From positions 124,001-188,000 of IMG/VR virus record IMGVR_UViG_3300018962_000001: 64,000 nucleotides of DNA; one strand, given 5' to 3'. A program made the position numbers and the translations under genes. The notes beneath the pieces are model-generated. The model worked only from the letters and a program-made list of their open reading frames with translations. It did no database searches and had not been told where the DNA came from. The first letter of the stretch is position 1, and every line of letters starts with the position of its first letter. Of this stretch, positions 17,163 through 50,298 are shown one piece after another.

Positions 17163-20100
17163 CTATCCTTTCAAGATATACCACCGATGTAAGCAGGCCG
17201 TCCCTTCACTGACCGCCAGCATTGCCAGCGGCACCTCGCTCAGAGTCACCGGCCACGGAATCGTTCCGACACTCACCATCCGTTTGCGATTCTGCCAGAT
17301 TTCGAGTCGTGCCCCCCCAGGCCGCGCCGCCAGCACGACGAGATAGCGGCCTGCCACACGACCGTCGACACTGCCCGCGACTCGTGCTGTCTGGCCGGTT
17401 GGATCAGCGGGGTCCACCCCCCATAGGAGAAAGCCCTGCGTTCGCCATTCTAACCAGATCCCGGCGCTGCCAAATCGTCGGTCGCGGGAGCTTGGGAGGG
17501 ACAATCCGATTTTGCCGGTTGCCGCCCCGCGCACGGCCTGAATCGTTAGATCGGCGACCAACGTGGGCTGGAATCGTGTCCCCGCTGCGCGTTCCCGAAT
17601 CGACGTACTTGCGAGGTGCGAGCCGTTCCCCGTCAAGACGATTCCAACATCCGGCTCATGGTCCACAACCCCCTGGATCGTATACAGCGGAGCAGGCAGA
17701 TCGCTATAGGCGAACGCCCCCGTGGCTGATCGCCAAAAGACATCGGCCAGGGCTACGTCATGGCGGACGCGCCAGGTCGTTTGATACTGATCGGTTCCGC
17801 GCGCATAGTGTCCCCGAACGCTGTGTGCGCGCAGCTCCGGCGTTTCGACCGCCACGCGCGTCCCATCCAGTAAAATCATGGGAAGAACGCCTGGGAGGGC
17901 CAGGAGACGCGGAAGGACTGCCGCCGTCGCCGCATCCGGCGGATAGGGTTCAACGGTCAGCGTTGTCAGATGGACGGCGCTCCGTTGGGCCACCGTTCGG
18001 CCACTCGTGGTTTCGGTAGCCTGAACCATGCCGCCACCAAAGCCGCGCTCAATCGTCCCTGCGCGGGTGTATAACGCCACCCCGCCCAGGAACAGCATAT
18101 TCCTGGGCACCTCCGACTCTGCCGGAAGGGTGGCTCCCGGTACCGGCGGCGACCACGGCGAGGGGCCACTTGGCCCCACGGTACGAATCTGGTACCAGTA
18201 CACACTTCCGCGTGGGAGGGGAACGTGATCCCACTGATAGGTGCGCTGCGTCGGATCGATCGGCAGCTGCGCGACGGGAGTCCACGTCAGCGCAGCTAAG
18301 GCATACGCGATTTCAAACCGCTGGGCAGTCGGGCTTGCCTGGGGATCGAAGGTCCAGTGGACTCGAATCCGATCAGCAAAGCCGCTCTCCGTCCGTACCG
18401 ACTCCGGCGGCGGCGGCAGGACCGGCAAGGAGCCACTGACAAAGGACGACCACGGAGACACGCGCATGCCACTGACGGCGCGAACCGCATACGTCACAAC
18501 GGTTCCGGGAGGCACCTGCGGATGCACCAACATCGGATGCGTCGCAGGCACGGATGGGAAACGGTACCACTGGCGGCGGTCAATGGTCCAGATCAGCTCA
18601 TTACTTTCTACCAGCGGCGTTGGATTGGTCCACTGGACCACGAGATCCGGTGCTTGCGGAATTACCACTAGATCAACGGGAGCTGCGAGCGACACTTCTT
18701 CGTGCCGGACGAGCGCGGCATGCTGGGTGGGGCGTCGCCCCGCTGCTCCGAGCAACATCGGCACCATGCGCAGGAGGACATGGTTTCCAGGGCGTCGTGG
18801 AATCACCGCCCCACCCTGGGCCAGAGTATGCAGGAAATCAAGTCCGGCGACAGCGGGGTGGCGATTCCACCCCGGACTTCCGCCCAATGGATGCCGCAGA
18901 CCACTGATCGTTGCCGCCGCTCCTGCCATTCGCACGGGCATGGCTCCCCCAAGCGGATGGTGGCGATCGAAGGCGGCGGTGGGTGCGCGGGGTGCGGCTG
19001 GGACCGATCCGCGTAGACTCACCTGGACCTGAAGCAGTGCGGCCCCGCCCTTCGCGGCTGCATGCTGGTGCCCCTGGATCGCGTGGCCGACTCGCACGGA
19101 GGCCGCCCCGGTAGGCCGGTGGCCGAAACTCGTCCCTTGGAGTGACGCGGCGGGAATCGCGGGCGTGCTACTCAGGAGCGCCACGGGCCGGACACGGCGG
19201 GCCGCCGCTGCCGCCCATAAGGTCGTCACTCCCCCACCCCAGGTAAGGCCACCCTGGATCGGGACGATCGCGGTCCCGTCCCGGCGACCCACGGTGCGCC
19301 GCAGGAGCCGCCCCTGGAGTCCCATACTGGCAGGAACCATACGGCGCAGGAGGGTACGGCGCAGGAGGGTTGTTCCCGGTGCTCCTGGGAGTGTAGGAAG
19401 GGCTACCGTGCGCCACTTCTGGCGATGAACGGCCAGGGCTGCTAGAATCGAGTGTGTGCCCGTGCGTTGGAGCACCACGCGCCGGAGCACACTTCCCTCC
19501 ACGCCCACCGTTGCTGCCACACCGCGCGCACGCCCCGTTCGCCACCCCACGGTGATGAGCAGCGCCGCCCCGGCCTGCTGGAACCGAGCACGGCCCACAC
19601 GGTATCCCAGGCTGGTCGTATTCGGGGTGGTCGCCGCAACAGCCCGCGGGACCGCCACACGGATCGTCAGATCCGTGGCGGCGCGACTCCGGCTCAAACT
19701 CGCCCCGGTAATGGCATGGGTCGTCATGAGGGCATTCACGTTATCGTAGGCGAGGGTATTCGGGGCACTTAGCGCTCCACCCGTACTGACATACGAATCG
19801 AATCGCACTCTGGTCGTGGCAAGCTGGCCCGCCGTGTAGAATCCTTGCCAGGCCAGATTCCATCCTGGCGGGTTCGTCCAGGTCGTGCCATCCGGCGAGA
19901 ACTCAGCATAGATCGTCCCGCCGGTTTCCCGAATTCGTGCCCAGCGATTAGCATTCAAGTCAAGCGGTGCGGAGGCAATCGTGGTATCCACGCCTGCCAC
20001 ACGCCGCTCAAAACTTAATGTCGCCCCAATGATTCGGATCTGAATCCAATGGCTTGAGTCAAAGCGGAGCGTGATTTGGTTGCGTTGCCGACTATCCAGC

Positions 20101-33450: not shown

Positions 33451-33530
33451 GGCCTGGATCGGCCTGAGACGGCATCGACGGGCAAGGCACGGTTGGGCTA
33501 TCCGTGGCTAGGTATGGTTGGGCGTGGCGC
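33451..33530 (+). ncRNA. Orphan (GGY-NN)16 pentamer-tract RNA, candidate guide
   Basis: 16 in-register pentamers, 13 starting GG; flanked by promoter and terminator. Confidence 0.65.
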
Positions 33531-33559
33531 AGCACCTCACATGTGTGAGGTGCTGTTTG
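33530..33559 (+). terminator. Rho-independent terminator
   Basis: CAGCACCTCAC-ATGT-GTGAGGTGCTG-TTT. Confidence 0.75.
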
Positions 33560-33916: not shown

Positions 33917-34924
33917 TTAAGGAGCAGTGCGCTCCGCTGCTTCGATGGTGTGAATCCCGGTGAGAAGTTGATAATACGCCAAGCTTCCAGGCTGAAATAA
34001 GAGCAGATAGCCTTGGAGCAACTCTTTCCGCGTGGCACGCGCGGGTTCTAAGGTGATGCGTGCTCGAATCAGCGCCATCCGTTCGTCATCCGTCAACTGC
34101 GGATCGGCCAGCCGATCTTCAAGCAGCAGGATCTTCTGGACGCGCGCAGCGGCAGCGAGGGCCATTGTGGTCGGCGAGATGATCGAGTCGGAGTCGTCCT
34201 CCGGTGGCGTATAAGGCCGGGGGGCAGCTAATCGGGTGGTTGGCCCCGTCGCCGGACGCAGACGTTGATAAATCTCGACCCACGACAGGCCCAACCGCCG
34301 GAGTGCGAGGATTTCCGCACGCCGGTTCGGCAGATTCTGATAGGCCACCGACTGACGCAGATCCTCCCAGAGCGGCTGAATCTCGCTGAACCACTGCTGA
34401 CGGCGGAGAACATCCTGTGGCCCCGGATCAAGCACTCGCACCTCCTCCGGCCAGAAAGCAATCGCCTGATCGATCTGGAGATTAATGAGTCCCAGTGGCA
34501 CGCCCGCAGCATCGCACTCAACACCATCTTGATCGATCCACGGCTTGTGCGGTGATCGCCGGATGAGATGGGGTTTCGTTCCCTGGATGACCGGGAAGAT
34601 CGCCGGATCGAGTGGGGGGACAAAGGCCGCATGCGACGTGGGATCATCCACGCGGGCCAGATCTGGGATCGTGTGCCCACACCCGGAACAAAACTTCGCA
34701 CCGGGTTCGATTCCACGATACCCACAGCGGGTACACTGATTTGCTGCGCGCGCGCGCTGTAGGCACTGATTTGCGAGCAATGTCCGGGACCGAAACTCTG
34801 CCAGATCAGATCGATAGAGCAGGGTGGTCCGGTAGGCTGCATACAAGGTCGCCATCAGGACTCCTACCTGAACTCCCTCACTCGAAAGATGGAATAGGAG
34901 ATCCACGAACCAATCATTCATCAC
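33917..34924 (-). CDS. Membrane-anchored Zn-ribbon protein
   Basis: N-terminal hydrophobic helix; CTRCG...GAKFCSGCG; coupled to upstream HTH gene. Confidence 0.7.
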   Translation of the reverse strand: MMNDWFVDLLFHLSSEGVQVGVLMATLYAAYRTTLLYRSDLAEFRSRTLLANQCLQRARAANQCTRCGYRGIEPGAKFCSGCGHTIPDLARVDDPTSHAAFVPPLDPAIFPVIQGTKPHLIRRSPHKPWIDQDGVECDAAGVPLGLINLQIDQAIAFWPEEVRVLDPGPQDVLRRQQWFSEIQPLWEDLRQSVAYQNLPNRRAEILALRRLGLSWVEIYQRLRPATGPTTRLAAPRPYTPPEDDSDSIISPTTMALAAAARVQKILLLEDRLADPQLTDDERMALIRARITLEPARATRKELLQGYLLLFQPGSLAYYQLLTGIHTIEAAERTAP

Positions 34925-35136
34925 TCCTCCCGTTCCTCCGGCGGCGGCGGCGCGAACAATGCCAGCAACGGCACACCGAGCGCGGCAGCCATTTTGTCAA
35001 GCGATCCGATCGTTAACGTCTCGACGTGGCGATTATGCCAGGCTTTGCGAACCGTCCCCACCCCCAGATCGGCCCGTCGTGCCAGCTTCGAGATATTTAA
35101 CGCCTGGGCGGTGGCGATAACAGCTACTTGAAACAT
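34921..35136 (-). CDS. Cro/C1-type (XRE) HTH regulator
   Basis: LNISKLARRADLGVGTVRKAW...TIGSLDKMAAALGV; AAGGAGG RBS. Confidence 0.85.
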   Translation of the reverse strand: MFQVAVIATAQALNISKLARRADLGVGTVRKAWHNRHVETLTIGSLDKMAAALGVPLLALFAPPPPEEREE

Positions 35137-35176
35137 TCGATCCTCCTTCCTCGTGTGGAGCGCGCATCATTGTGCA

Positions 35177-35260
35177 TTGACAGACCGCATATCTATGTTA
35201 TACTGTCATTATAATGTATAGTATATAGAGTATAGCATACAAAACCTATGCTACATTATA
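35177..35260. promoter_or_regulatory. AT-rich divergent promoter/operator region between HTH gene and pentamer array
   Basis: TTGACA-16-TATACT (35177-35204); near-palindrome TATACTGTCATTATAATGTATAGTATA; inverted repeat TAGCATA-N7-TATGCTA (35233-35253). Confidence 0.7.
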
Positions 35261-35309
35261 CTCCCACTCCCGGCAGAATGCTAGACATTCGACAGATGAA
35301 TTCGGACAT

Positions 35310-35710
35310 GGTTGGGTGTGGATTGGCTAGGCTAGGAGAGGCACGGTGAGGTCTGGCACGGATGACTCTGCACTGAGTCCAATCCCTTCGGGGTATCTGG
35401 GTATGGCATGGGAACGGTTGGGTCCGGTAAGGATCGGCTGGGAGCGGCAAGGTGTGGCAAGGTCGGGCTGGGCCGGGCAACGCAGGGCACGGATGGCGGT
35501 GTATTCCGCCACCATTCCCCACCAGGGGAATACGAGGATGGCTGGGCGCGGGCATGGCGAGGCGTGGCAAGTCGAGGCTGGGCCGCGCTAGGTGCGGCAA
35601 GGCACGGATGATCGTGGATTCGATCACCATCCCTCACACGAGGGTTATTTGGCTCGGATCGGTCAGGATTGGCTAGGTCAGGTGGGGCTGGGTGAGGCTT
35701 GGTTTGGTAC
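35310..35710 (+). repeat. Array 1: four (GGY-NN)n pentamer units, the first three each closed by two hairpins (candidate guide RNA array)
   Basis: Tracts of 10, 16-18, 11-13 and 12 pentamers at 35310, 35400, 35540, 35651; conserved GGCAC-GGATG-stem-TGNAYT-stem end. Confidence 0.9.
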
Positions 35711-35720
35711 AAGGAGCAGT

Positions 35721-36359
35721 ATGATGGCATCCAACATGATTCAAGCGACGGTTGAGATCCAGGGAACGAAGCCACTGTTGTGGCACGCCTTTACGCCCGA
35801 CAGCATTCCGGCGGACGGCAAGAAGGAAAAGACCGGGGTGGCGGGTAACGATCCCCAGGAATGGCGGCGATCCTTCCTGGCGGATCACGAAGGCCGCTTG
35901 TTTGTGAACCCGGAATACATCTTCGGCTGCCTGCGCGATGGCGCGCGACACACCAAAAAAGGCCGTGGATCGATTATGTCGAATGTGGCGGCAACGCTTC
36001 AGATCGTGGACGAGCGGATCTACACCGATCGCTATTTCCCACGCAACGGCGCGACTGGCCCCTTTGATCCGGCATCGGCGGATCGCCCGCCGATCGAGAT
36101 CACCGAGCCGGTTTATCTCGACGTGCGATCGGTGAAGAACCCGTCCACGAAAGGTCGGAACGTCCGCTACCGGGTGGCGGCGAGTCCAGGGTGGCGGGCG
36201 AGCTTTACGATTCTGTGGGACAAAACCATTGTCAGCCGCACCGAGATGGAGGCGGTCATTACTGATGCGGGCCGACTCGTCGGGCTGGGTGATGGCCGAT
36301 CGATCGGCTTTGGTCGATTCATGGTGGTGCCAGGGTCCATCACGTTTACCGAGGTCTAG
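35721..36359 (+). CDS. Stand-alone RAMP / Cas7-like RNA-binding protein (Vipr-like)
   Basis: AAGGAG RBS; VEIQGTKPLL (beta1), LFVNPEYIFGCLRDGA (alpha1), C-terminal Gly-rich loop GLGDGRSIGFGRF, all RAMP hallmarks; no other cas genes. Confidence 0.85.
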   Translation: MMASNMIQATVEIQGTKPLLWHAFTPDSIPADGKKEKTGVAGNDPQEWRRSFLADHEGRLFVNPEYIFGCLRDGARHTKKGRGSIMSNVAATLQIVDERIYTDRYFPRNGATGPFDPASADRPPIEITEPVYLDVRSVKNPSTKGRNVRYRVAASPGWRASFTILWDKTIVSRTEMEAVITDAGRLVGLGDGRSIGFGRFMVVPGSITFTEV

Positions 36360-36369
36360 AGTCTTTCGA

Positions 36370-36427
36370 GGCGAGGCATGGTGAGGTGAGGTATGGGGTG
36401 GTTGGCGAGGTACGGCCTGGCAAGGAG
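36370..36427 (+). repeat. Pentamer tract (unit 5) forming the leader of the HNH gene
   Basis: GGCGA GGCAT GGTGA GGTGA GGTAT GGGGT GGTT GGCGA GGTAC GGCCT GGCAA GGAG. Confidence 0.85.
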
Positions 36428-36434
36428 TTTGAAC

Positions 36435-36752
36435 ATGGGCATGAAACGACAACCTCCGAAGATCTGGGAAGGAACCCGCAAACGAATATTCGAACGCGAT
36501 CGGGGGATCTGCCAATCTCCCCTGGCTCCACCCCTGTGTCAAGGGAAACGCGGCGAGTTAACGCTTGCCACGGCGCATATCGACCACCGGCGAAGCGGTC
36601 GGTTTGGCACGAATGCGGATAGCAACCTCCGGGTGCTCTGCCGCGCGTGCCACGTCCTCCGCGACGATCCGCGCCACCGAGGCATGATCGGCGGAGCCTT
36701 GCGCGACGGGATCATCCCTCCCCATTGGCGGGAGCTAACCTGGGGAGAGTAG
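36435..36752 (+). CDS. HNH endonuclease
   Basis: RKRIFERDRGICQ...C...AHIDH......GTN.DSNLRVLCRACH. Confidence 0.9.
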   Translation: MGMKRQPPKIWEGTRKRIFERDRGICQSPLAPPLCQGKRGELTLATAHIDHRRSGRFGTNADSNLRVLCRACHVLRDDPRHRGMIGGALRDGIIPPHWRELTWGE

Positions 36753-36974
36753 ATGGGTCGTCCAAGGCACAGAACGGGTGCCGTGCGCCAGCTGCCGTGG
36801 CGCAGAGTCGTCACGGCAGCACGTGATGGCGGAATCATGGGGGCGGTGCTGGGAGGGGTGTTCTTTGGCCCTTCTGGCGCGCTGGTGACCAGCTTAGTAG
36901 GAGCGGTGGCAGCGGCGGCGGTTCGCTGGTATCGAAGCGTCAAGGCGAGAGGTCGCATGGGAAGGCATGGATGA
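36753..36974 (+). CDS. Small glycine-zipper membrane protein
   Basis: GGAG RBS, starts at HNH stop; GGIMGAVLGGVFFGPSGALVTSLVGAVAAAAV followed by basic residues. Confidence 0.6.
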   Translation: MGRPRHRTGAVRQLPWRRVVTAARDGGIMGAVLGGVFFGPSGALVTSLVGAVAAAAVRWYRSVKARGRMGRHG

Positions 36975-37325
36975 TCGTGGATCGATCCCACTTCTCGGTT
37001 GGGCAAGCGAGGGTCTGGCAAGGACAGGCAAGGCTTGGCTCGGCAGGGTCGGGTTCGGCTGGGCAAGGATACTGGTGTTTCCAGTACCATCGATTGGGTG
37101 TGGCGGGGCGGTGGTAGGGTGGGGCTTGGCTTGGTCCGGCACGGCAGGGATGATGGTGTCTCCATTCCACCTCATGGTCGGGCGAGGAGGGGCGAGGCAG
37201 GGCTAGGCGGGGCAAGGTGAGGCCCGGCAAGGTTCGGCACCGATCCTCGTGTCATCGAGGCCACCACGGGGTATGCCGAGGCGTGGTAAGGTGAGGCTAG
37301 GCTGCGGTGAGGTCCGGCGAGACGG
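36943..37325 (+). repeat. Array 2: one degenerate plus four (GGY-NN)n units with single hairpins
   Basis: Tracts at 36997 (14), 37097 (10), 37176 (13), 37270 (about 11); hairpins TACTGG-TGTTT-CCAGTA, ATGG-TGTCT-CCAT, CCTCG-TGTCAT-CGAGG. Confidence 0.9.
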
Positions 37326-37327
37326 GG

Positions 37328-37358
37328 AACAGGACGGGTGCTGGTCACCCGTCCTGTT
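37328..37358. terminator. Strong hairpin between convergent array and tail chaperone gene
   Basis: AACAGGACGGGTG-CTGGT-CACCCGTCCTGTT, 13-bp perfect stem. Confidence 0.7.
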
Positions 37359-37830
37359 GATTCTCCGGTGCCTGGTCGGCGAACTCATCAACCTTGTTGG
37401 CACGTTTGTAGGCTTGCCAGAAGGCTGACTGCATCGGCGGCGGCGGCGGCGGGGCGAATGGATCTTGATAGACCTTCTCAAACGGCGGCAGCGCCTGCGG
37501 TTTCTTGCCACCGAACGCGGGTCCAAGGACGCGGGCCAGGGCGGTTTCGAGGGCCATAATCTGACTCATTTGCTGGTCCCAGCGATTCCGCGCGACCTGC
37601 TGGTACTCGCGATGGAGTCGCCGCCACCGCCAGCCCAGCACCTCCTCCAGGGGCAAATGCCGGGTTGCCACGATCTCGGTCACCATGTCGTCGATCAGGG
37701 TGCCAATGGCTCCTATGATGTCGAAGGCGAGTTGACCACCGTTGCGCCAGCTGGTGGTGGAGTCTTGGCCGGTTGTTGATTGCGCTTGCCCCACAGCTCC
37801 ACCGCTTGCCGGGCGAGCGTGAAGTTTCCC
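37345..37830 (-). CDS. Tail assembly chaperone, -1 frameshift extension (gpGT-like T part)
   Basis: Open in the -1 frame from slippery site 37830; LPLEEVLGWRWRRL resembles gpT-type motif. Confidence 0.8.
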   Translation of the reverse strand, partial: GKLHARPASGGAVGQAQSTTGQDSTTSWRNGGQLAFDIIGAIGTLIDDMVTEIVATRHLPLEEVLGWRWRRLHREYQQVARNRWDQQMSQIMALETALARVLGPAFGGKKPQALPPFEKVYQDPFAPPPPPPMQSAFWQAYKRANKVDEFADQAPENQQDG

Positions 37831-38390: not shown

Positions 38391-39056
38391 TTAGGTAAGC
38401 TCAAACAAGAGTCCGAAGTCCGAGCCGTCCGTGACGCCGGGATCGGGCAGGATGTTAAAGCTAAACTCGTTCGTGGTCGTGCCACGCGATTGAATTTGGA
38501 AGTCTCCGGCGGAGGCGATCCGCGCTTTCCGCAAGAAGAACATGCGAATCTTGCCGGTCACATCATTTTGCTGGAGCACCACCAGCGGGCGCTCGATCAA
38601 GGCAGATGGCGCACCAAGCCCTACCCGTCGCTGCGCAGCGTTGGCGGGCGTCCCGCTCGGGTTTGCGGAAATCGCGGTGATCGCGCCGAGTGCCCACAAC
38701 CATTTCATACGGTCGAGACTGGTATCCATACTGGTCCCGCCGAGCGTCATGGCAAAGTTATTCGGACGACCGCCGCGCAGCGGATAATCGCGTTGATCGA
38801 TATTGATGCCGTCTTGTATATCAAAGCTGCGACCGAGCGTAATTCCATCCTCACTGGTCGCCCCGAAGTCATGATAGCCATCTTCCAGGGCGTAGCTCGT
38901 CAGATTCAGGATGTCCTCAATGTAGCGCGGCACCGCCTGAGTCGGCACCGGCGTTTCCGGCGCGACCGCGGCATAAACGAGGCGTGCCCCGCCTTGCCAG
39001 ATGCGCGCATCTGCGCTGGCATCAATACTAATGGCACTAACCAGTTGCGTTGCCAT
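38391..39056 (-). CDS. Major tail (tube) protein
   Basis: RIWQGGARL...DFGATSEDGITL...FSFNIL tube-protein pattern and position. Confidence 0.85.
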   Translation of the reverse strand: MATQLVSAISIDASADARIWQGGARLVYAAVAPETPVPTQAVPRYIEDILNLTSYALEDGYHDFGATSEDGITLGRSFDIQDGINIDQRDYPLRGGRPNNFAMTLGGTSMDTSLDRMKWLWALGAITAISANPSGTPANAAQRRVGLGAPSALIERPLVVLQQNDVTGKIRMFFLRKARIASAGDFQIQSRGTTTNEFSFNILPDPGVTDGSDFGLLFELT

Positions 39057-39583: not shown

Positions 39584-40093
39584 TTATCCCATCGTTCCCA
39601 GCGCATCGCGCGCCACCTGCCGCAAACGAGCGATCGTCTCGGCCTGCGTCCGCTGCCACGCGCGTTCAATAAATGGATTGGGCCGAGTACCGGGATGATT
39701 GACCTTCCGAAAGAAGTAGATCCCCCCGGTCCCAAACGGCGCATTCGGCCATTCAAACGCCAAGGCCCGGCCACGGCGCGATCGAATGACGTGAGGCGGT
39801 GATCCTTCCACGACCAGCGGGATCAGATCGGCATGCGGGCCTTCGGCAATGATTTGTGCTTGTGCCCGACCTGGCCCGAGCGAACGAATCCGATACGTGA
39901 TCGAATCGGCCATGTGCGGATCGGCCCGATTCGCCTCAGTTCGCACACCGCGCGGCGCTTCGGCACGCAGCGCCTCCACGACTCGCTCGGCTTCTTCCCG
40001 CAGCCGTTGGATCTGGGCACGCTCTAAACTGCTGGAATACCGGGCATAGCGACCTTGCGCATCGCGGAGTCCCGTCGTCGTCAGGGTAATCAT
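39584..40093 (-). CDS. HK97 gp10-like tail completion protein
   Basis: AEAP....HMADSI...VVEGSPPHVIR...ALAF...VNHPGTRPNPFIERA. Confidence 0.85.
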   Translation of the reverse strand: MITLTTTGLRDAQGRYARYSSSLERAQIQRLREEAERVVEALRAEAPRGVRTEANRADPHMADSITYRIRSLGPGRAQAQIIAEGPHADLIPLVVEGSPPHVIRSRRGRALAFEWPNAPFGTGGIYFFRKVNHPGTRPNPFIERAWQRTQAETIARLRQVARDALGTMG

Positions 40094-40623
40094 CGCGTGT
40101 ACCTCACTTGCAGGCCGATCGTGGTTGATCCTCCGGCGAGCAGGCCCAACTCCGCGCCAATGTTCGGGCCGGTGTCCGGGCGCAGGCTCGATGCTTGGCC
40201 TTCGTCCACCGGCGGCGTGATCGACATGATCTCGTAGGGCCAGCGTGGCTCTGCGGCGAGGATCGTTTCCAGCAGGGCTTCGCCATACCGCCAGCCCATC
40301 AGGGTTGCTTCTCGTACAGTTGGTCCCAGGACCTGCCATTCCACCAGCACGCTGTGGAGCGCCAGCGCAATCTTCTGACTTGTCTGGCCCGGTAGCGGCG
40401 ACCGAGGCGCAGCGATCACGGCTACGCGCGGAAAGTCGTCGATAAACAAATCCAGCACGTTCTCCCGAAAGCCGAACGTGATCTCGGCAGGCGGGGGGAG
40501 CACAATCGGCTCACGGGCTGCCCAGCGCGTTTGCACCGTGCTCAGCCAGGTAGGCAGATCCGCGCGAATGGCCTCCTCGACGGCCCGCGCCACATACTCG
40601 GTTTGCAGCGCTGGTGTTGCCAC
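40090..40623 (-). CDS. Putative tail terminator protein
   Basis: Position, size, FPRVAVI motif. Confidence 0.65.
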   Translation of the reverse strand: MATPALQTEYVARAVEEAIRADLPTWLSTVQTRWAAREPIVLPPPAEITFGFRENVLDLFIDDFPRVAVIAAPRSPLPGQTSQKIALALHSVLVEWQVLGPTVREATLMGWRYGEALLETILAAEPRWPYEIMSITPPVDEGQASSLRPDTGPNIGAELGLLAGGSTTIGLQVRYTR

Positions 40624-42078: not shown

Positions 42079-43140
42079 CTAGATCGTTGGAGCCGTATAG
42101 GTTGCGCCCCCAACATAGAGGACGGCCCCGTTCGTCCTATTCCAGACCCCGATCCCAAACTCCCTGTCCATCGTCTGGGCGCGCAGTGGATAGTGCTCGT
42201 GGTCGGCAGCAATCGTCAGATCCCCGGCGAGACCACCATCACGGGTGCGCAGCACCAGCGGTTTCAGCGGCGAGGCGGCATCGAAGCAGAAAAGGTAGCC
42301 GGATGGAACCCACGGCTTCACCCACACCTCCGCTGGCCCGAAGATCCCGATGGCGCGGTTATACATCGTGCCCATATCGAGAGTCCGACCCGGTGCGGTT
42401 CGCTCGTTGGCTCCCGGCTGAATCCGCATATCGAAATAGGGCGTGAAGTTCGAGAATGCCCGGAACGTGGCTTCCGACGCGCGATTGATATACAGCCGGA
42501 CCCCTACGCCAAACCCGTGCTCGACCACCGTCTCAACCACGTTCAGCGCTGCCGCTTCGGTCAGCGTGGTGGTTGCGAGGTAGTGGGTATGTGTGCTTGA
42601 ATCAAACGGCTGCCCGTAGGGATCGTTGGGGATGGCCGTCCCATCCGCATTGACCAACGCCCGCAGCGGCACGTTGACGTTATCCACCAACCGATCGATG
42701 TAGGCAAGGTTGTTCGTTGGGGTAAATAACGCACGCTTAATCTGCCGTTGGATATTCCGAATATCCGCCGTGCGGGCCGCGACATATTGTGCGTCCAGCT
42801 CGGCGACGGTTCGGTTCATCATGTAGAGTCGCGTCCATTGAATCGAGTACTGGAACAGGCGCATCGGAAAGCCCACGGTAACACCGGCGGCGATCTTCTG
42901 CGCGTCTGCCGTGCCGTACTCGTCAACTTCGACCATCTCGCCCTCGGCCACGCCACCGTAGCGGCGCTGGCGATCGACGGTCGGATCGACCAGATCCCCG
43001 ATCATTTCGCGCACAATCATATTGTGGGCATCGAGGTTGGCTTGAATCGCGGCGAACGCACGGTCCTCCCCAAACTGCGCAATCGTCTGATTGGCGGCCT
43101 GGGTGTCAAGGACCTGTAAGGTACCGTATGAGGTTGCCAT
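42079..43140 (-). CDS. Major capsid protein (HK97 fold)
   Basis: 353 aa after scaffold and decoration genes; GGGAGG RBS; HTHYL, FGIGVWNRTNGAVL, YTAPTI terminus typical of lambda-E-like capsids. Confidence 0.85.
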   Translation of the reverse strand: MATSYGTLQVLDTQAANQTIAQFGEDRAFAAIQANLDAHNMIVREMIGDLVDPTVDRQRRYGGVAEGEMVEVDEYGTADAQKIAAGVTVGFPMRLFQYSIQWTRLYMMNRTVAELDAQYVAARTADIRNIQRQIKRALFTPTNNLAYIDRLVDNVNVPLRALVNADGTAIPNDPYGQPFDSSTHTHYLATTTLTEAAALNVVETVVEHGFGVGVRLYINRASEATFRAFSNFTPYFDMRIQPGANERTAPGRTLDMGTMYNRAIGIFGPAEVWVKPWVPSGYLFCFDAASPLKPLVLRTRDGGLAGDLTIAADHEHYPLRAQTMDREFGIGVWNRTNGAVLYVGGATYTAPTI

Positions 43141-45237: not shown

Positions 45238-48200
45238 TCACCTCCGTACCTGGGCGCGTGTTCGGCTGGGGAGCACCATGCTGCGACAACGATGGCTGAC
45301 CACTGCTGCGCGCATCCGCAGATCACGCACGACGGCGCGAATTGGGAGCGCGAGCGTCGGGATCGCGCCCTGAAGATCGCCTGCCACGACCGCAAAACTG
45401 AGCACGGCGTGGCCGATCGATCGACTCAGCACCTGCCCGGCCCGCAGGGAAGCCTCCACGCTGAGCACGACCAACAGCGCACGCTGTCGGTGCGCTGTCG
45501 CGCCTGGCCCGACATCAAGCGCGATTCCGGCAGTCACCGATCGATACCCCGCACGTCGGGTGCCAGCAGCAATGATACTCGGTGCTGCGCTGACCAGGCT
45601 CCGAGCCACCGTGCTTTTGGCATGGAGGCTTCCCGTTCCAGCGGCGGTGCTGGTGAGCTGCCGCTGGGAATCTCGTCGCACCTGGGCGGTCATCAGATCG
45701 AGGACGCTTATCGCAATCGTATGCCCCCGCGCACTGATTCGATCGACGGTCCCCTGTACCGGGCCATGCCATCCACCAGGCCGGTGCGATTCTTGTGCCC
45801 GCGCGCCGGTGATGGTGGTGGCATGATCCACCTCGCCGAACCGAGTAGCCCCACCCCGACGCAGCACGTGGGCTTCCCCAACGACCCCCGCCGACACTCC
45901 CTGCCGGACCAGTGCTTGCCGGGCCAGCTGGAGACCGGTCTCCAGCGGAACGCCGAGACCGCGCACGGTGCTTGCCTGCGACCCAATCACAGCCTCAGCT
46001 TCCGCGTCCACCGTCCCGCTTCGATCGCGTCGACTCCACCGTTCAGCAAAGGTGCTCCCCGGAATAACGAATCCCGCATGGCGGGCACTTTGCCCCCCCG
46101 GACTCACCAGCGGGACCGCTGCCAGGCTGTCGCTCACGGCCCGAATCAGGCGTTGATCGCCACGCAGCCACGCCACCGCCAGCGCCCCCCACGGAGCTGC
46201 GCGACCAAAGCCCCGTCGCGTCGCGCTGGCCGGGTCGATCCCTTGGCTCACTGAGGGCGCGCGCGCGAGGATCTGGCGGCCTCCGGTTGTCGCGACCGGA
46301 GCAATTGCCTCTGCCACCCACTGGATCATGGTTGTGACTCGATCCCCGATCGTGGTTGTGACGATGGCGATCGGAGCCGTGCGGCGCTGGGCAAGGATGC
46401 GCGTCCCAACACTCATGACTCCCGTACCCCAGCCTGGCACACGGCGCACGGCCTGATGGGCCGCGAGGCCGATCGCTGGAAGATTTGCAGTTGCCGTTTG
46501 GCGAGACGCCGCCGTTCCCGCAGCGATGCCGGTGCCGATCGGCATCACTTGACTACGCAGGCGGGTTAACGCTTGGGCAGTGCGTAGCAGGCCGATCCCT
46601 GGCAGGTCCAGTAGCACGCCCCGCAGCGCCTCACGGCGCTGGGTAAGTCCGGCGGCGGCGGCGGCGATCGCCATGATCCCCCGGCGAATCGTTTGCTGTC
46701 CGCCCAGCGCGAGGGTGCTGCCGGTTCCCGCCGCGATCTGGCGCTGGGTCATGGTGCGATACCCAAGCCCACTGTTCGCCGCCTGGGTGCTGCCGATCCC
46801 GCGCAGGCCGTGGGTCATACGACTCGTGGTCATGGTGATGGGGACGGGCACCGCTGGGACCTTCAGTGCGTGTCCGCCTTTTGCCAGAGGGACCCCGATC
46901 TCGGTGGCGATTGCCACCGAGCGCGTCACCACTTGGCCCGCAGCAACGGTTGTATAATCGAGGTGATAGTCGTCAACATCAAAGATTTGCTGGGTTCCCG
47001 CAGGGACATTATCGATCTGCAAGGCGGCAACAATCCGGGGTGAGTTCCACATATCCACCACGCCCGGATAGCTTTCGTTCAGGACAAACAGCACGCCATC
47101 CGAAAGAAGCCAGCGGTAGGTAATCTGGTCATTCGCGATGTCCACAACAAACTCCAGGCGATGCCATACATCTGGGTCTAGCTCCTGCGTGAATCCATAG
47201 GCTTGCTCCGTTGAGGGCCGGTTGGCATCCCAGCCACGAGTCGCGCCAAACGGTCGCCAGTGCCGCGTTGGCGCGGTGATGATGTACGTAAAGGCAGCCT
47301 CCAAGCGCCGTCCCTGCTGGTACACCGAAAACGGAAACTCGACGGCTTGCGGGGCATTGACCGTGCCCGCATAGCGCCAGTTGATCCGGTAGATCCATCG
47401 CACGGCATCGACCCACGGAAGATCCTGGTACCGATACACATTGACATAGACCGGCTCACTCCCCGTATTGACCCCACCTGAGGTGGTGATTTCGATTTGA
47501 TAGATCTGTCCATCGCCCGATGGAGCCGATGCGTCCGCGACGATTCGATGGGTCTGCGTCATCGTATAGCCGGGCGACCCATCATTCGGGTTGAAGGTTG
47601 TGAGCGCGCCGTGAGTCCAAAATGCCTCGGTGTAGAGTTTCCATGCACTCAGCGCCGCCTGATCCAGCGGACCAAAAAATCCCTGGCTGCTACTGTCTCG
47701 CCGGGTCAGCGCTCCACTTGCAGGGAGGTTGACCCCTCCAGCGCGCTGGAGTGCCCGCCGCCCAATAGGCAGAGCGGCACTGTTTGCGAGGGTTGTGACT
47801 GCCTGGCGGCGTGCGGCGATCGTCCGCCAGATGCCGCGACTTCCGGGCAGCAACACACTGAGTTGTTTCGTGGCCTGGCCGCGCAGGCTTAACGCGGCCA
47901 GGGCTGGCCCGACCCAGGAGCCAGCAAGATGGGCACCTATGCGACGGACCAGCAGGCCGTTAACAGGGATGATGTGGTCCACCCCGCGCGGCTGTCCGAT
48001 CCTCCGCCCAGCACTCGTCTCCAAGGCGATCGAGGTCGTGGCAGCGCGCGTGATCGCGTTGCCAGCCGCAGGCGGGGCATTTAGATTGTCAAAGCTCGCG
48101 GTGTAGGCAGCGGCAGCGGCTCCCGCCGAGGACGTGCGTGCCCCAAATTGGACATATACCGACTCCAGCTCCGCGCCGGTGAGGATGGAGGTACTTTTCC

Positions 48201-50298
48201 ACGCGGTTGTCCCATCCGGCAAGGCATCAGGATGACTCCAGGTCAGCCCGTCTGCCGATACATCTCCATACAGAACCCCCGCCGTTTCCCGAATCCGCCA
48301 CCATCGATGGGCTGCCTCCTGGTAGCTGATCGTAATCGCTCCAATCCCGGTTTGCTGCCATTCCAGCGCCTGGGTATTCCCGTTATACTGAATCCAGACC
48401 GCATCCGCACTGGGATTGACGACCGCGGTTGCTTGCACCCGCAGCAGCACCCGCACGTTCGTTGTTGCGACTAAGGGGAGCACTTCCACGTGAATCGCTT
48501 GGCCGGTCAGGCGATAGGCGCTCGCAGAGGTGTAATAGCCGTAGTCACTCCCTGCTCCGGCGGAGGAAAGACTGATCTGAAGAACGGCTCCCGTTTCTGT
48601 CAGCGTTGGGGTTGCTGTCTTGTGGACGGTCCACATCGGACTCGCCACCGTGTCACTAAACGTATCGACCAGGCTTCCAAGGTTGGCGGTACTACTCATC
48701 ATCTGGATCGTCGGTTCGACGCCAACACCCACCGCCGGACCGATAAAGGCACCGCGCGCCACCGAGTCGATCGAATTTACTCCCAGAGACGCATTCCCGC
48801 TGATCAGCGCTCCTCGGCCAGTGCTTCGGATCGGTGCGGGTCCTGCCGTGGCGGGTATCGCGACGGTGCTGGATCGTGGATAGGCGGATCGATCGCCAAG
48901 TCCTGATGTGTTTGGCGAGGCAATCGTGCTGGCACGGCGAATACTAACGCCCACGCCAACACCGGGGGTGACACTGACTCCGACCGTTGGCTGACGGATG
49001 ACCGCCGTGGCTCCGGCGGCGGCCTCCTTATAGGTCACAATACCGCCAATCCAGGTTGCCGTGGCCGACAGGGTAAAGCCCACGGTTTCCGCTGCCCCAC
49101 CCACAAGGTCGCGGGTCCCCACGGTTAACGCGGCAGTCGTGGCGTCAGGATAACTCCCGCGACTCGCGTATGGACTGGCAACGCTGACCGACGCGACGGT
49201 CGCCGCATTCGCCAGCAGGCCGATCGCGAGGCGATTGCCACTGCCAAGGGCGGCACTGGTCGTCGCACTCGCAGCAGTCCCCATCCCGCCGCTGAACCCC
49301 GTGCGATCAACGGGATTGGTTGTGGCAATGCCAACAAACTCAAATGCGATGATCGAAAGATTGCCGGACCCAGCGCCACGCTGCACGGTGATCAAGGGAT
49401 TCGTGGTTGTCTGATTGTTTGCGTAGCGCCAGATCTGAATTTCATCACTCCCGCTAACCTGAACAAAATCGCGCGTGAAGCCGAGACCGCTGTTGTAGCT
49501 GACACTGGTAATCTCACTGGTTCCCGACATGCGATTATTCAGGGCGACGATCAGGGACGATCCTGATCGCGCGGCTTGCGGGAAGGAAAGGTTAAAGGTC
49601 GTGGTCGAGATTCCCTGGTTCCGGGCGGATTGGCAGAGGCCAAACGCACTGGGGGTCGCTGGGACGAGAAACACCGTGAGTCCACTATAGGCTCCGCTTC
49701 CCGCGTCATGCGATCGTGATCCGGTGACTCCTTCGGCAAGATCGTAGCCATACGCGACAAACTGGCGGCAATGAGCCGTGGTGGTCCCACCACTATTTTG
49801 ATCGGTCTCCTTGAACATCCGCCAATCCGCGGTGTACGTCGTGCCGGGCACCGCGCTCGTCTCTACCGTTAACCGCATCGCGCCGCGATAGCCAAGCCCT
49901 GCCCCATTGGTGGCAGCCGCATCCGTATGGGTGGTTCCGGTGGTACCACTGTACGACAAGAGACCGACCGCGCGCGCGCCCGCCGTGGTGAGCACGCCAG
50001 AGATCCCGCAACATGACCAGACACCGCGGCCCGATGTTCCCCAGGAAATGACGGGCGCGGCGGCGTTCCAGGCCGCTGAGAACAGCGCGGTACAGGTGGC
50101 GTTCGTCGAATCCTGGACCTGGCCTTCCTTGGTCCATCCGGTCGTTGCCGTTGTCACGGTGATGGCCGTGCTCGTTTTGATCGACACAAACACCCACAGC
50201 GTATCCTCGCTTGTCAGTGCAGGCGAGGATGGCAACGTGGGCGTTACCGACGCGGCGCTGAAGGTGCCCGTGGTTTTGTTTTTATGGCGAATGGGCAC
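45238..50298 (-). CDS. Giant (1686 aa) virion appendage protein: beta-sandwich, LamG-like and jelly-roll domains separated by 20-aa periodic spacers
   Basis: WWRIRETAGVLYGDVSADGLTW LamG-like motif; 5+6+26 twenty-residue units starting with Arg. Confidence 0.8.
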   Translation of the reverse strand: MPIRHKNKTTGTFSAASVTPTLPSSPALTSEDTLWVFVSIKTSTAITVTTATTGWTKEGQVQDSTNATCTALFSAAWNAAAPVISWGTSGRGVWSCCGISGVLTTAGARAVGLLSYSGTTGTTHTDAAATNGAGLGYRGAMRLTVETSAVPGTTYTADWRMFKETDQNSGGTTTAHCRQFVAYGYDLAEGVTGSRSHDAGSGAYSGLTVFLVPATPSAFGLCQSARNQGISTTTFNLSFPQAARSGSSLIVALNNRMSGTSEITSVSYNSGLGFTRDFVQVSGSDEIQIWRYANNQTTTNPLITVQRGAGSGNLSIIAFEFVGIATTNPVDRTGFSGGMGTAASATTSAALGSGNRLAIGLLANAATVASVSVASPYASRGSYPDATTAALTVGTRDLVGGAAETVGFTLSATATWIGGIVTYKEAAAGATAVIRQPTVGVSVTPGVGVGVSIRRASTIASPNTSGLGDRSAYPRSSTVAIPATAGPAPIRSTGRGALISGNASLGVNSIDSVARGAFIGPAVGVGVEPTIQMMSSTANLGSLVDTFSDTVASPMWTVHKTATPTLTETGAVLQISLSSAGAGSDYGYYTSASAYRLTGQAIHVEVLPLVATTNVRVLLRVQATAVVNPSADAVWIQYNGNTQALEWQQTGIGAITISYQEAAHRWWRIRETAGVLYGDVSADGLTWSHPDALPDGTTAWKSTSILTGAELESVYVQFGARTSSAGAAAAAYTASFDNLNAPPAAGNAITRAATTSIALETSAGRRIGQPRGVDHIIPVNGLLVRRIGAHLAGSWVGPALAALSLRGQATKQLSVLLPGSRGIWRTIAARRQAVTTLANSAALPIGRRALQRAGGVNLPASGALTRRDSSSQGFFGPLDQAALSAWKLYTEAFWTHGALTTFNPNDGSPGYTMTQTHRIVADASAPSGDGQIYQIEITTSGGVNTGSEPVYVNVYRYQDLPWVDAVRWIYRINWRYAGTVNAPQAVEFPFSVYQQGRRLEAAFTYIITAPTRHWRPFGATRGWDANRPSTEQAYGFTQELDPDVWHRLEFVVDIANDQITYRWLLSDGVLFVLNESYPGVVDMWNSPRIVAALQIDNVPAGTQQIFDVDDYHLDYTTVAAGQVVTRSVAIATEIGVPLAKGGHALKVPAVPVPITMTTSRMTHGLRGIGSTQAANSGLGYRTMTQRQIAAGTGSTLALGGQQTIRRGIMAIAAAAAGLTQRREALRGVLLDLPGIGLLRTAQALTRLRSQVMPIGTGIAAGTAASRQTATANLPAIGLAAHQAVRRVPGWGTGVMSVGTRILAQRRTAPIAIVTTTIGDRVTTMIQWVAEAIAPVATTGGRQILARAPSVSQGIDPASATRRGFGRAAPWGALAVAWLRGDQRLIRAVSDSLAAVPLVSPGGQSARHAGFVIPGSTFAERWSRRDRSGTVDAEAEAVIGSQASTVRGLGVPLETGLQLARQALVRQGVSAGVVGEAHVLRRGGATRFGEVDHATTITGARAQESHRPGGWHGPVQGTVDRISARGHTIAISVLDLMTAQVRRDSQRQLTSTAAGTGSLHAKSTVARSLVSAAPSIIAAGTRRAGYRSVTAGIALDVGPGATAHRQRALLVVLSVEASLRAGQVLSRSIGHAVLSFAVVAGDLQGAIPTLALPIRAVVRDLRMRAAVVSHRCRSMVLPSRTRAQVRR

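What the first reader, a model, noticed from the sequence alone, without database searches (positions are those of the whole stretch)
35177..37358. Candidate non-CRISPR RNA-guided system: lone Cas7-like RAMP + HNH nuclease embedded in (GGY-NN)n pentamer RNA arrays
Seen: a 212-aa protein with RAMP hallmarks (GTKPLL, P.YIFG.LRDGA, terminal GLGDGRSIGFGRF), with no cas1/cas2/cas5/cas6 and no CRISPR repeat-spacer array. It is surrounded by ten non-coding tracts of up to about 18 pentamers (one is degenerate). In each pentamer positions 1-2 are almost always GG, position 3 is mostly C/T (sometimes A), and positions 4-5 vary freely and differ between tracts. The unit is transcribed from one AT-rich promoter and ends at a strong hairpin. 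Established: Cas7 RAMPs polymerise along guide RNA with a fixed nucleotide step. Inference: one protomer clamps each GGY and presents NN, so each tract is a guide whose information is the string of dinucleotides, read against a gapped target. This fits my recollection of the recently reported phage VIPR family (Vipr RAMP + GGY/NN RNAs, every third target base skipped, anti-phage competition). That match is from memory and needs checking. Decoded NN strings: U1 (35310) TG GT TT TA TA GA AC GA CT AC; U2 (35411) AC TG CC AA TC TG GC AA GT AA CG TG CG AA AG AC; U3 (35551) AT GA GT AA GA TG CG TA GC AA AC; U4 (35651) TC TC CA TT TA CA GG TG GA TT TT AC; U7 (36997) TG AA AG CT AA CA AA TT TC AG CG TC TG AA; U9 (37176) CG GA GG GA AG TA GG AA GA CC AA TC AC.
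Basis: partly seen in the sequence, partly recalled or inferred. Interest (0 to 1): 0.97.

Follow-up and report, generated by a model that had tools for sequence, protein, structure and literature searches.

The report
Phage VIPR system with HNH nuclease

Summary
On the + strand, 35310-37320 carries nine runs of at least 5 perfect GG-phased pentamers (longest 14). 500 dinucleotide shuffles gave a mean of 0.14, and the other 60 kb of the window has 0 on + and 1 on -.

The 211/212-aa protein is a real Vipr:
- It matches the solved SUSP1 Vipr chain (E 8e-6 alone, 3e-10 as a family profile).
- It folds as a Cas7-type RAMP.
- It keeps 4 of the 5 published GGY-contacting residues.

An HNH gene with an intact catalytic core follows vipr in 41 of 50 related viral loci. 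The cassette lies between the tail genes and the tape-measure gene of a 204.7-kb viral contig.

This locus is a new member of a known kind, most like the HNH-bearing type.

New here: read with the published 1-nt-skip rule, guides V2 and V7 both land, antisense and with the skipped base at the codon wobble position, on the segment encoding the HExxH site of Peptidase_M78 (ImmA/IrrE) genes. No perfect natural target was found. Three other guides gave only chance-level hits or none. Transcription, RNP assembly and nuclease action remain inferred.

The parts
33481..33556 (+). V0: outlying vrRNA-like unit. Ten pentamers (one degenerate) run into a 12-bp hairpin followed by a T-rich tail.
   Evidence: hairpin z = -3.1. 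It resembles the solo or orphan vrRNAs described in 10.64898/2026.10.15.759431.
34921..35136 (-). Divergent 71-aa Cro/CI-type HTH gene; possible regulator of the cassette promoter.
   Evidence: Pfam HTH_26, E 1.6e-5. It is not conserved next to vipr in the 49 other loci. Inverted repeats at 35194-35260 overlap the promoter and leader. The regulatory role is inferred.
35177..35204 (+). Predicted sigma-70 promoter of the cassette.
   Evidence: TTGACA, 16 nt, TATACT with TG; 11 of 12 matches. It lies in an AT-rich stretch. This is a consensus match only.
35310..35399 (+). V1: 10 GGY-NN repeats (35310-35359) plus a 3' tail (GGATG, hairpin, second small hairpin).
35400..35535 (+). V2: 2+16 repeats (main phase 35411-35490) plus a two-hairpin tail. 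Its predicted target is the HExxH-coding segment of Peptidase_M78 genes.
   Evidence: tail z = -3.5
35536..35650 (+). V3: 11 repeats in phase from 35551 (two degenerate) plus a two-hairpin tail.
35651..35710 (+). V4: 12 repeats with no tail, ending 10 nt before the vipr start codon.
35724..36359 (+). vipr: a 211-aa RAMP (212 aa if started at 35721).
   Evidence: PDB 36pp_D SUSP1 Vipr, E 8.4e-6 and 3.4e-10. AF2 pLDDT 83. The top 50 listed Foldseek hits are CRISPR effector-complex chains. More than 2000 homologues. phrog_4652, function unknown.
36370..36428 (+). V5: 12 repeats (one 4-nt unit) with no tail. The last repeat (GGAGT) supplies the Shine-Dalgarno sequence of the HNH gene.
   Evidence: The same arrangement occurs in about 17 relatives.
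36435..36752 (+). HNH nuclease (vap-type accessory gene), 105 aa.
   Evidence: Pfam HNH at its cut-off; PHROG HNH families at 1e-8. It lies downstream of vipr on the same strand in 41 of 50 loci. C26, C35, D50, H51, N60, N64, C69, C72 and H73 are at least 90% conserved.
36753..36974 (+). 73-aa glycine-zipper-like hydrophobic ORF. Its start codon directly follows the HNH stop codon. It is unique to this locus.
   Evidence: Only weak Pfam Gly-zipper hits. Absent from the 49 other loci. Called as a gene.
36944..36996 (+). V6: degenerate remnant tract plus a tail hairpin that begins at the stop codon of the 73-aa ORF.
36997..37095 (+). V7: 14 repeats (one degenerate) plus a short one-hairpin tail. 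Its predicted target is the HExxH-coding segment of HTH-Peptidase_M78 genes.
   Evidence: 60, 62-66, 72-75, 87
37096..37175 (+). V8: about 10 repeats with two 1-nt phase slips plus a short tail.
37176..37279 (+). V9: 13 perfect repeats plus a tail.
37280..37358 (+). V10: 5+3 repeats, then a 13-bp hairpin (37328-37358) that ends the unit.
   Evidence: z = -2.3

Best explanation
The locus is a phage-encoded VIPR (Viral Interference Programmable Repeat) cassette of the nuclease-bearing kind.

One promoter (35177) most likely drives, in order: three tailed vrRNAs, a tail-less tract, vipr, a tail-less tract, the HNH gene, a small membrane-protein gene, and five more vrRNA units.

By homology to the solved SUSP1 system, Vipr protomers polymerise one per pentamer. 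They bury each GGY and present each NN, and the filament reads double-stranded DNA as NN-x-NN-x, with one base skipped per repeat.

Here at least two guides (V2, V7) are complementary to the sense strand of the most conserved stretch of Peptidase_M78 (ImmA/IrrE) genes, the codons around the HExxH zinc site. The skipped base falls on the wobble position. These genes are anti-repressor proteases of prophage and ICE switches, and HTH-M78 partners of HigB-type toxins. The cassette is therefore most likely a weapon of this large phage against resident mobile elements or toxin-antitoxin modules.

The conserved HNH partner most likely cuts the DNA held by the filament.

Shown here: homology, fold, repeat statistics, synteny and the target signature. 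Inferred: transcription, processing, RNP assembly, DNA binding, cleavage and the biological role.
For: Homology and fold:
- Match to the solved SUSP1 Vipr: E 8.4e-6 for the single sequence and 3.4e-10 full length for the family profile.
- In those alignments H22, R151, D191 and R193 line up with SUSP1 H17, R138, D177 and R179. The structure paper shows those residues contacting G1, G2 and Y3.
- AF2 model: pLDDT 83, pTM 0.78.
- Foldseek: the top 50 listed PDB hits all come from type III Csm/Cmr or type VII CRISPR effector complexes, E 4e-7 to 3e-5.

Repeats and synteny:
- The tracts are far beyond chance.
- Same-strand tracts lie beside vipr in most of the 50 viral loci.
- An HNH gene is downstream in 41 of 50 loci, with its catalytic and zinc residues conserved.
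- The tail hairpin changes stem sequence between units (GACTC, GGCGG, GATCG, ACTGG, CCTCG) while keeping the pairing and the flanking GGAUG...ACC.

Target signature:
- The V2 8-NN seed with 1-nt skip gave 30 viral loci. At least 18 read, antisense and wobble-skipped, as QRFTLAHE inside Peptidase_M78 ORFs, and the match extends to 24-26 of 32 guide bases.
- The same seed with a 2-nt skip gave 9 loci, no shared family, and at best 22 of 32.
- The best V7 hit (24 of 28) is again at the HExxH of an HTH-M78 gene.
- V7 homologues found by protein search gave 22-24 of 28 with skip 1, against 18-19 with skips 0, 2 and 3, and a maximum of 21 in 1000 permutations of the guide.
- No self-target exists in the window, as the paper reports for its systems.

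Viral context: major head, neck, major tail, tape measure and tail fibre genes surround the cassette, and the contig is an IMG/VR viral genome of 204,685 bp.
Against: - No perfect or near-perfect natural target was found. 10-NN seeds of V2 and V9 gave 0 viral hits, and a 10-NN V2 seed gave only two chance hits in metagenomes.
- V9 and V4 seeds gave only chance-level hits, so 3 of the 5 guides tested have no interpretable target.
- The M78 loci for V2 were picked by a skip-1 seed, so that part of the skip test is partly circular.
- The residue equivalent to SUSP1 W178, which stacks on G2, is a glycine here.
- V4 and V5 lack tails, so they may not be guides.
- There are no expression data.
- The HNH role is inferred from synteny only. 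An HNH could instead process RNA, or simply be a selfish endonuclease that travels with vipr.
Confidence: 0.85

Rival explanations
1. It is a VIPR system that only represses transcription, as the characterised type II systems do. On this reading the HNH protein does not cut targets: it matures the polycistronic vrRNA transcript, or is a homing-type selfish endonuclease that hitch-hikes with vipr.
For: - Only repression has been shown experimentally for VIPR.
- The window has no ribozyme between units, so some enzyme must cut the array.
- HNH genes are common free-standing selfish elements in phages (PHROG hits).
Against: - The HNH gene has been kept directly downstream of vipr, on the same strand, in 41 of 50 loci across 37-62% HNH identity. 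Its active site is intact and it has a clade-specific conserved C-terminal extension. Hitch-hiking homing endonucleases do not keep such a fixed partner.
- The preprint itself reads nuclease vap genes as target destruction.
Confidence: 0.2
2. The guides act on RNA rather than DNA. V2 and V7 are both antisense to the mRNA of their predicted targets, so the filament could bind transcripts of M78 genes.
For: - Both interpretable guides pair with the sense strand.
- The structure paper shows that Vipr-vrRNA can form a duplex with single-stranded RNA.
Against: - Two of two guides in one orientation has a chance probability of 0.25.
- With RNA, the published filaments mostly stall and form no triplex. 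Published targets lie on both strands, and repression works on either strand.
- HNH enzymes are typically DNases (established knowledge).
Confidence: 0.08
3. The M78 matches are fortuitous, and the real targets are other phages or satellites absent from the collections. On this reading the locus is still a VIPR, but nothing can be said about what it attacks.
For: - The best matches are 81-86% of guide bases, not perfect.
- By my own calculation, 80% NN identity is reachable by chance for short guides in a collection of about 100 Gb.
- Three other guides gave nothing.
Against: - Two independent guides hit the same domain family at the same catalytic motif, in the same orientation and codon register.
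- V7 exceeded all 1000 permutations and all other skip lengths.
- The V2 seed returned 30 loci against 6-14 for the other skip-1 seeds that gave only scattered hits and 9 for its own skip-2 control.
- 56 guides from related loci do not hit the M78 loci above chance.
Confidence: 0.25
4. The pentamer tracts are not RNA genes. They would be coding sequence or a plain DNA repeat (for example a G-rich structural or recombination element), and the RAMP-like protein is unrelated to them.
For: A gene caller placed an 81-aa ORF over V1-V3, and open frames cross the tracts on both strands.
Against: - A 5-nt period cannot be a reading frame.
- The tracts are strand-specific and co-oriented with vipr in most of the 50 loci, with NN differing between loci.
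- The homologous SUSP1 tracts are transcribed and bound by Vipr.
Confidence: 0.02

Closest known systems
VIPR type II systems of Escherichia phage SUSP1 and a Pseudomonas fulva prophage (bioRxiv 10.64898/2026.04.26.720920 and .720927)
   Same: - A homologous Vipr protein (E 3.4e-10 by profile, full length).
- vrRNAs built from GGY-NN pentamers with a structured 3' tail.
- vrRNAs both upstream and downstream of the genes.
- Phage-borne, with no self-targets.
- The target signature follows the 1-nt skip, with the skipped base at the codon wobble position.
- Predicted targets are regulators of other mobile elements.
   Different: - The accessory gene here is an HNH nuclease, not the DNA-binding vap1.
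- There are about ten units, against four in SUSP1.
- The tail is a simple covarying hairpin flanked by GGAUG...ACC (a pseudoknot was not tested).
- The residue equivalent to W178 is glycine.
- Two tail-less tracts serve as leaders of vipr and HNH.
- There is an extra small membrane-protein gene.
Nuclease-bearing VIPR types III and V of the same preprint
   Same: - Vipr plus a predicted nuclease. An HNH vap is illustrated in fig. S21 of the preprint, which shows type II, III and VII representatives; that the HNH example is the type III one is my inference from the text.
- The two-gene core is the same.
- One relative of this locus (L023) has a hammerhead-like ribozyme right after its tract (36.3 bits against a cut-off of 37). 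The preprint describes this for types I and V.
   Different: - The preprint describes these types as enriched in defence islands and repurposed for host immunity. This locus sits inside the tail-gene block of a 204.7-kb viral contig, and 50 relatives come from IMG/VR viral contigs.
- The preprint mentions single-vrRNA systems, whereas this locus has ten to eleven units.
- The window has no hammerhead.
- The exact type could not be assigned, because the paper's classification tables are not held.
Cas7 backbone of class 1 CRISPR effectors (Csm3, Cmr4, type VII Cas7)
   Same: - RAMP fold with a G-loop and thumb (Foldseek E 4e-7, TM about 0.5).
- Polymerises along the guide with a fixed step and flips bases at each step (established).
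   Different: - No CRISPR array and no other cas genes.
- The step is 5 nt with three guide bases buried, not 6 nt with one flipped.
- The guide is a genomically fixed tandem repeat, not an acquired spacer.
Solo or orphan vrRNAs of satellites and SUSP1-family phages (bioRxiv 10.64898/2026.10.15.759431)
   Same: V0 (33481-33556) is a stand-alone vrRNA-like unit with its own terminator-like hairpin, separated from the cassette by two genes on the opposite strand.
   Different: It lies in the same genome as a complete VIPR system, so it need not be a decoy or hijacking RNA. It has no GGAUG-hairpin tail.
TIGR-Tas systems (named in bioRxiv 10.64898/2026.10.21.760802)
   Same: A non-CRISPR RNA-guided system encoded as a short-period tandem array.
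   Different: The period is 18 nt, against 5 nt here, and the effector named there (FpTasA) is a different protein. Here the protein is a Cas7-type RAMP homologous to SUSP1 Vipr. The locus is not a member.

Membership tests
VIPR system | Vipr protein homologous to an experimentally characterised Vipr | tested here: met
   phmmer against PDB 36pp_D (SUSP1 Vipr) gave E 8.4e-6. A profile of 35 homologues gave E 3.4e-10, covering profile positions 8-191 against chain residues 5-190.
VIPR system | Small RAMP fold: one RRM core, a glycine-rich loop and a thumb | tested here: met
   AF2 pLDDT 83, pTM 0.78. The top 50 listed Foldseek PDB hits are chains of type III Csm/Cmr or type VII CRISPR effector complexes. 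The G-loop GLGDGRSIGFGRF lies at residues 187-199. The protein is 211 aa, leaving no room for a second RRM.
VIPR system | Residues that hold GGY in SUSP1 Vipr (H17, R138, D177, W178, R179) | tested here: met
   Four of five are conserved and invariant or nearly invariant in the family: H22, R151, D191, R193. The W178 equivalent is G192, so G2 stacking must differ.
VIPR system | vrRNA genes: tandem YNNGG/GGYNN repeats (at least 4, typically 9-16) with fixed GGY and hypervariable NN, beside vipr | tested here: met
   Ten units of 7-18 repeats. GG in 99 of 103 pentamers and Y at position 3 in 91 of 103, with NN variable. Shuffle control. Same-strand tracts lie beside vipr in most of the 50 loci.
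VIPR system | Conserved structured 3' tail after the repeat tract | tested here: met
   Seven units carry GGAUG, a 5-6 bp hairpin (loop starting UG) and ACC. The stem sequence differs between units while pairing is kept. V1-V3 add a second hairpin. V4, V5 and V10 lack this tail. A pseudoknot was not tested.
VIPR system | Minimal locus: no CRISPR array and no other cas genes; one accessory (vap) gene | tested here: met
   No direct repeats of at least 22 nt within 120 nt anywhere in the window; TRF result. The neighbours are phage structural genes and an HTH gene. HNH is the conserved partner in 41 of 50 loci.
VIPR system | Targets read with a 1-nt skip, with the skipped base usually at the codon wobble position | tested here: met
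   Computational signature only, and for 2 of the 5 guides tested.
- V2: 30 loci with skip 1, at least 18 at one M78 motif, 24-26 of 32 bases. With skip 2: 9 loci and at best 22 of 32.
- V7: 24 of 28 with skip 1, against 18-19 with other skips and at most 21 in 1000 permutations.
- V9 and V4 were at chance level, and a 10-NN V9 seed gave 0 hits.
No perfect target was found.
VIPR system | vrRNAs transcribed, processed to about 100 nt and bound by Vipr as a helical filament | not testable with these tools
   This needs small-RNA sequencing, pull-down or cryo-EM. Only a predicted promoter and an end hairpin are available.
VIPR system | Encoded mainly by viruses or proviruses | tested here: met
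   The cassette lies between the major tail and chaperone genes and the tape-measure gene. The contig is IMGVR_UViG_3300018962_000001, 204,685 bp.
VIPR type III (as far as the preprint text describes it) | HNH-domain vap | tested here: met
   Pfam HNH and PHROG HNH families, with the catalytic core conserved. That HNH equals type III is my reading of the text and the fig. S21 legend.
VIPR type III (as far as the preprint text describes it) | Placement in the Vipr phylogeny, vrRNA architecture, and defence-island context | tested here: inconclusive
   The classification tables are not held. The context here is a phage tail module, not a defence island. The locus has ten to eleven units, not one. 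About 13 relatives do show the simple vipr-HNH-tract layout.
Ribozyme-interspersed vrRNA array (VIPR types I and V) | Hammerhead ribozyme between successive vrRNAs | tested here: not met
   No Rfam family at E up to 1 in 34800-37800, apart from a spurious miRNA hit on the end hairpin. A near-threshold Hammerhead_II exists in relative L023.
Class 1 CRISPR-Cas | CRISPR repeat-spacer array plus cas gene set | tested here: not met
   No array. There were no PADLOC hits for vipr or the 73-aa ORF; the HNH gene hit only HNH (ZorE) models and the HTH gene hit only mad1 weakly, none of them cas. The fold resemblance to Cas7 is homology at superfamily level only.

The most novel reading that the evidence does not exclude
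A nuclease-type VIPR carried by a large phage aims several guides at the one stretch of Peptidase_M78 genes that cannot easily mutate: the HExxH codons, read with the wobble base skipped. That would give the phage a broad-spectrum programmable nuclease against resident prophage anti-repressors and HigB-linked HTH-M78 antitoxin modules, which would make it a counter-defence use of VIPR as well as inter-phage warfare. In addition, the tail-less tracts that end in the ribosome-binding sites of vipr and HNH (a layout recurring in about 17 relatives) would let Vipr occupancy set how much nuclease is translated.
Probability: 0.25. Interest if true: 0.7.

Novelty: new member of a known kind. Interest (0 to 1): 0.42.

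Why it matters
VIPR is months old as a concept, and only its repressing type II has been studied at the bench. This locus offers three things.

- It is a compact, phage-borne, HNH-armed example (vipr 211 aa, HNH 105 aa) with ten natural guides. That makes it a good candidate for testing whether nuclease-type VIPRs cut the DNA they bind.
- It qualifies the published picture that nuclease types are host-defence derivatives. This one sits in a phage tail-gene block, and 50 relatives come from viral contigs.
- The predicted convergence of two guides on the catalytic motif of M78 anti-repressor and antitoxin genes gives a concrete hypothesis about what such a system attacks. It can be tested with ordinary plasmid-interference and reporter assays in laboratory E. 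coli.

Tried and rejected
- 10-NN exact seeds of V9 and V2 (20 specified bases, 1-nt skip) in viral contigs gave 0 hits.
- A 10-NN V2 seed (NN7-16) in metagenome contigs gave two hits. Neither extends, and L082, the one checked, has stops in the wobble-skipped frame, so both look like chance.
- An 8-NN V9 seed gave 6 loci, at best 21 of 26, not significant.
- An 8-NN V4 seed gave 25 heterogeneous loci with no common ORF or family.
- No guide matches the window itself under skips 0, 1 or 2. The skip-3 matches are the vrRNA genes themselves.
- 86 guides from all loci held at that point (the window's own included) against those loci and the window showed no skip preference. 56 relatives' guides against the M78 loci were at chance level.
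- A protein search for an exact V7 target peptide gave at best 13 of 14 codon classes (P0204), but its DNA matches only 23 of 28 because Ser is coded TCN there.
- There is no hammerhead or other Rfam family in the window's tails, and none at gathering score in 38 relatives.
- The apparent similarity of the sequences after the V0 and V10 hairpins is limited to about 12 nt, so I dropped it as a cassette boundary.
- Pfam and PADLOC do not recognise Vipr.
- TRF does not detect the tracts, because only 2-3 of 5 positions are fixed.

Full report
**1. Observation**

The + strand between 35310 and 37320 holds nine runs of at least five perfect GG-phased pentamers, the longest with 14.
- 500 dinucleotide-preserving shuffles of 35177-37358 gave a mean of 0.14 such runs, never more than 2, and never a run longer than 7.
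- The other 60 kb of the window has none on + and one on -.

Allowing single degenerate repeats and 1-nt phase slips, the region parses into ten units, V1-V10. Over 103 pentamers:
- positions 1-2 are GG in 99;
- position 3 is C or T in 91, A in 10 and G in 2;
- positions 4-5 vary freely.

Three ORFs sit among the tracts: 35721/35724-36359 (212/211 aa), 36435-36752 (105 aa) and 36753-36974 (73 aa). A near-consensus sigma-70 site lies at 35177-35204, in a stretch of 44-46% G+C. A 13-bp hairpin closes the unit at 37328-37358.

**2. The protein**

Pfam and PADLOC do not know it. It does match the PDB chain 36pp_D, 'SUSP1 Vipr protein': E 8.4e-6 with the single sequence, and 3.4e-10 over its full length with a profile of 35 homologues.

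The alignment puts H22, R151, D191 and R193 opposite SUSP1 H17, R138, D177 and R179. The cryo-EM paper shows those residues holding G1, G2 and Y3. The tryptophan that stacks on G2 is a glycine here.

An AlphaFold2 model (pLDDT 83, pTM 0.78) finds only chains of type III Csm/Cmr and type VII CRISPR effector complexes among its 50 listed PDB matches, E 4e-7 to 3e-5. The family has more than 2000 members at about 60% identity in metagenomes.

**3. The literature**

- bioRxiv 10.64898/2026.04.26.720920 describes Vipr, the GGY/NN vrRNAs with a structured tail, the 1-nt skip rule, seven types and vap1-6, including predicted nucleases.
- 10.64898/2026.04.26.720927 gives the structures.
- Two October 2026 preprints add satellite competition with solo vrRNAs, and a language-model survey that found 99 VIPR-like clusters.

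**4. Relatives**

A scan of viral contigs returned 50 loci. One is the window's own contig, IMGVR_UViG_3300018962_000001, 204,685 bp.
- Most have same-strand GGNNN tracts directly beside vipr.
- A homologue of the HNH gene lies downstream on the same strand in 41 of 50. Its D-H...N...H core and four cysteines are at least 90% conserved.
- The 73-aa ORF and the divergent HTH gene are not conserved partners.

Two layouts recur among the relatives:
- vipr, then a tract, then HNH. The tract ends in or just before the HNH ribosome-binding site. About 17 loci show this, including the window.
- vipr and HNH adjacent, followed by a tract. About 13 loci show this.

**5. Tails**

Seven units end with GGAUG, a 5-6 bp hairpin whose loop starts UG, and ACC.
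- The stems differ in sequence between units but keep pairing.
- V1-V3 add a second hairpin.
- V4 and V5 have no tail.
- No hammerhead or other Rfam family is present in the window.
- One relative, L023, has a Hammerhead_II at 36.3 bits, just under the cut-off of 37, right after its tract.

**6. Targets**

No guide matches the window itself. Exact 10-NN seeds found nothing useful.

*V2.* An 8-NN seed with the 1-nt skip returned 30 viral loci.
- At least 18 of them read, on the opposite strand with the skipped base as the codon's third position, as QRFTLAHE followed by LGH. This is the HExxH site of Peptidase_M78 (ImmA/IrrE) proteins.
- The match runs beyond the seed to 24-26 of 32 guide bases.
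- Pfam confirmed M78 in all seven ORFs tested.
- The same seed written with a 2-nt skip gave nine unrelated loci and no extension.

*V7.* A seed gave 14 loci.
- The best one (24 of 28) is again just at the HExxH of an HTH-M78 gene, reading RHDRLDNFWFCLLH.
- Homologues fetched by protein similarity scored 22-24 of 28 with skip 1, against 18-19 with skips 0, 2 and 3, and at most 21 in 1000 permutations of the guide.
- In two genomic places this M78 subfamily sits directly after a HigB toxin gene.

*Other guides.* V9 and V4 seeds gave only chance-level hits.

The skip rule and a target class are therefore supported for two guides, and no exact natural target was recovered.

**7. Context**

On the - strand, the major head (42082-43140), neck (39587-40339) and major tail (38394-39056) genes lie on one side of the cassette. 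The tape measure (25755-33398/33485) lies on the other side, with a tail fibre beyond it. The + strand cassette, together with the HTH gene and a 335-aa ORF, splits the usual tail-chaperone and tape-measure junction.

**8. Verdict**

The locus is a VIPR system of the HNH-bearing kind, carried by a phage. It is a new member of a kind already published.

What is added here:
- the phage context of a nuclease type;
- the large array;
- the simple tail;
- the leader tracts ahead of vipr and HNH;
- the predicted M78 targets.

Transcription, RNP assembly, DNA binding and cleavage are all inferred.

Noticed in passing
window 33481-33556 (+): An eleventh vrRNA-like unit (V0) with ten pentamers running into a 12-bp hairpin followed by a T-rich tail. 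It lies 1.7 kb upstream of the cassette, beyond two genes on the opposite strand, and overlaps the upstream end of the longest tape-measure ORF. It may be a solo vrRNA with its own terminator.
   Followed up: partly
L023 4987-5052 (identical in L024): A Hammerhead_II ribozyme at 36.3 bits (gathering score 37, E 6e-4) starts right where a 17-repeat tract ends, in a Vipr+HNH relative. L010 has a similar CGAAAC...CUGA-like tail. Ribozyme-processed arrays therefore occur inside this HNH clade, although the window has none.
   Followed up: partly
window 36370-36434 and 35651-35723; relatives L003, L007, L011, L015, L017, L028, L035: Tail-less tracts end in, or a few bases before, the Shine-Dalgarno sequence and start codon of HNH (often ...GGCAAGGCAAGGAGA) and of vipr. 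If Vipr coats these tracts, it would cover the ribosome-binding site.
   Followed up: partly
L146 and L147, 7702-9221: The HTH-Peptidase_M78 subfamily matched by guide V7 is encoded immediately after a HigB_toxin gene, beside a Y1 transposase, in a chromosomal setting. Sources name it HigA antitoxin.
   Followed up: no
window 36753-36974 (+): A 73-aa hydrophobic, glycine-zipper-like ORF whose start codon directly follows the HNH stop codon. It is found in none of the other 49 loci. Its 3' end overlaps a degenerate vrRNA remnant and tail.
   Followed up: partly
window 35346-35591 (+): The public gene call on this contig places an 81-aa protein across V1-V3. It is almost certainly a false ORF created by the stop-poor GG-rich repeats. 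Many similar ORFs appear on both strands of the tracts.
   Followed up: partly
window 35194-35260: Several inverted and direct AT-rich repeats (TATAGCATA/TATGCTA type) overlap the predicted promoter and leader, next to the divergent Cro/CI-type HTH gene (34921-35136). They are possible operator sites.
   Followed up: no
L043-L048: A more distant, HNH-less Vipr clade (38-43% identity) has tracts immediately upstream of vipr. Their repeats often carry A at position 3 (GGAAA, GGAAC) and end in GGTTT followed by a T/A-rich run, so the repeat consensus differs.
   Followed up: no
window 4508-5065 (+) and 6949-23870, 45238-50298 (-): A cluster of three tRNA genes (Asp, Arg, Ile) and four very large ORFs (1991, 1426, 2235 and 1686 aa). 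The first is a tail fibre with fn3, CBM_4_9 and Peptidase_S74 chaperone domains; the other three have no Pfam match.
   Followed up: partly
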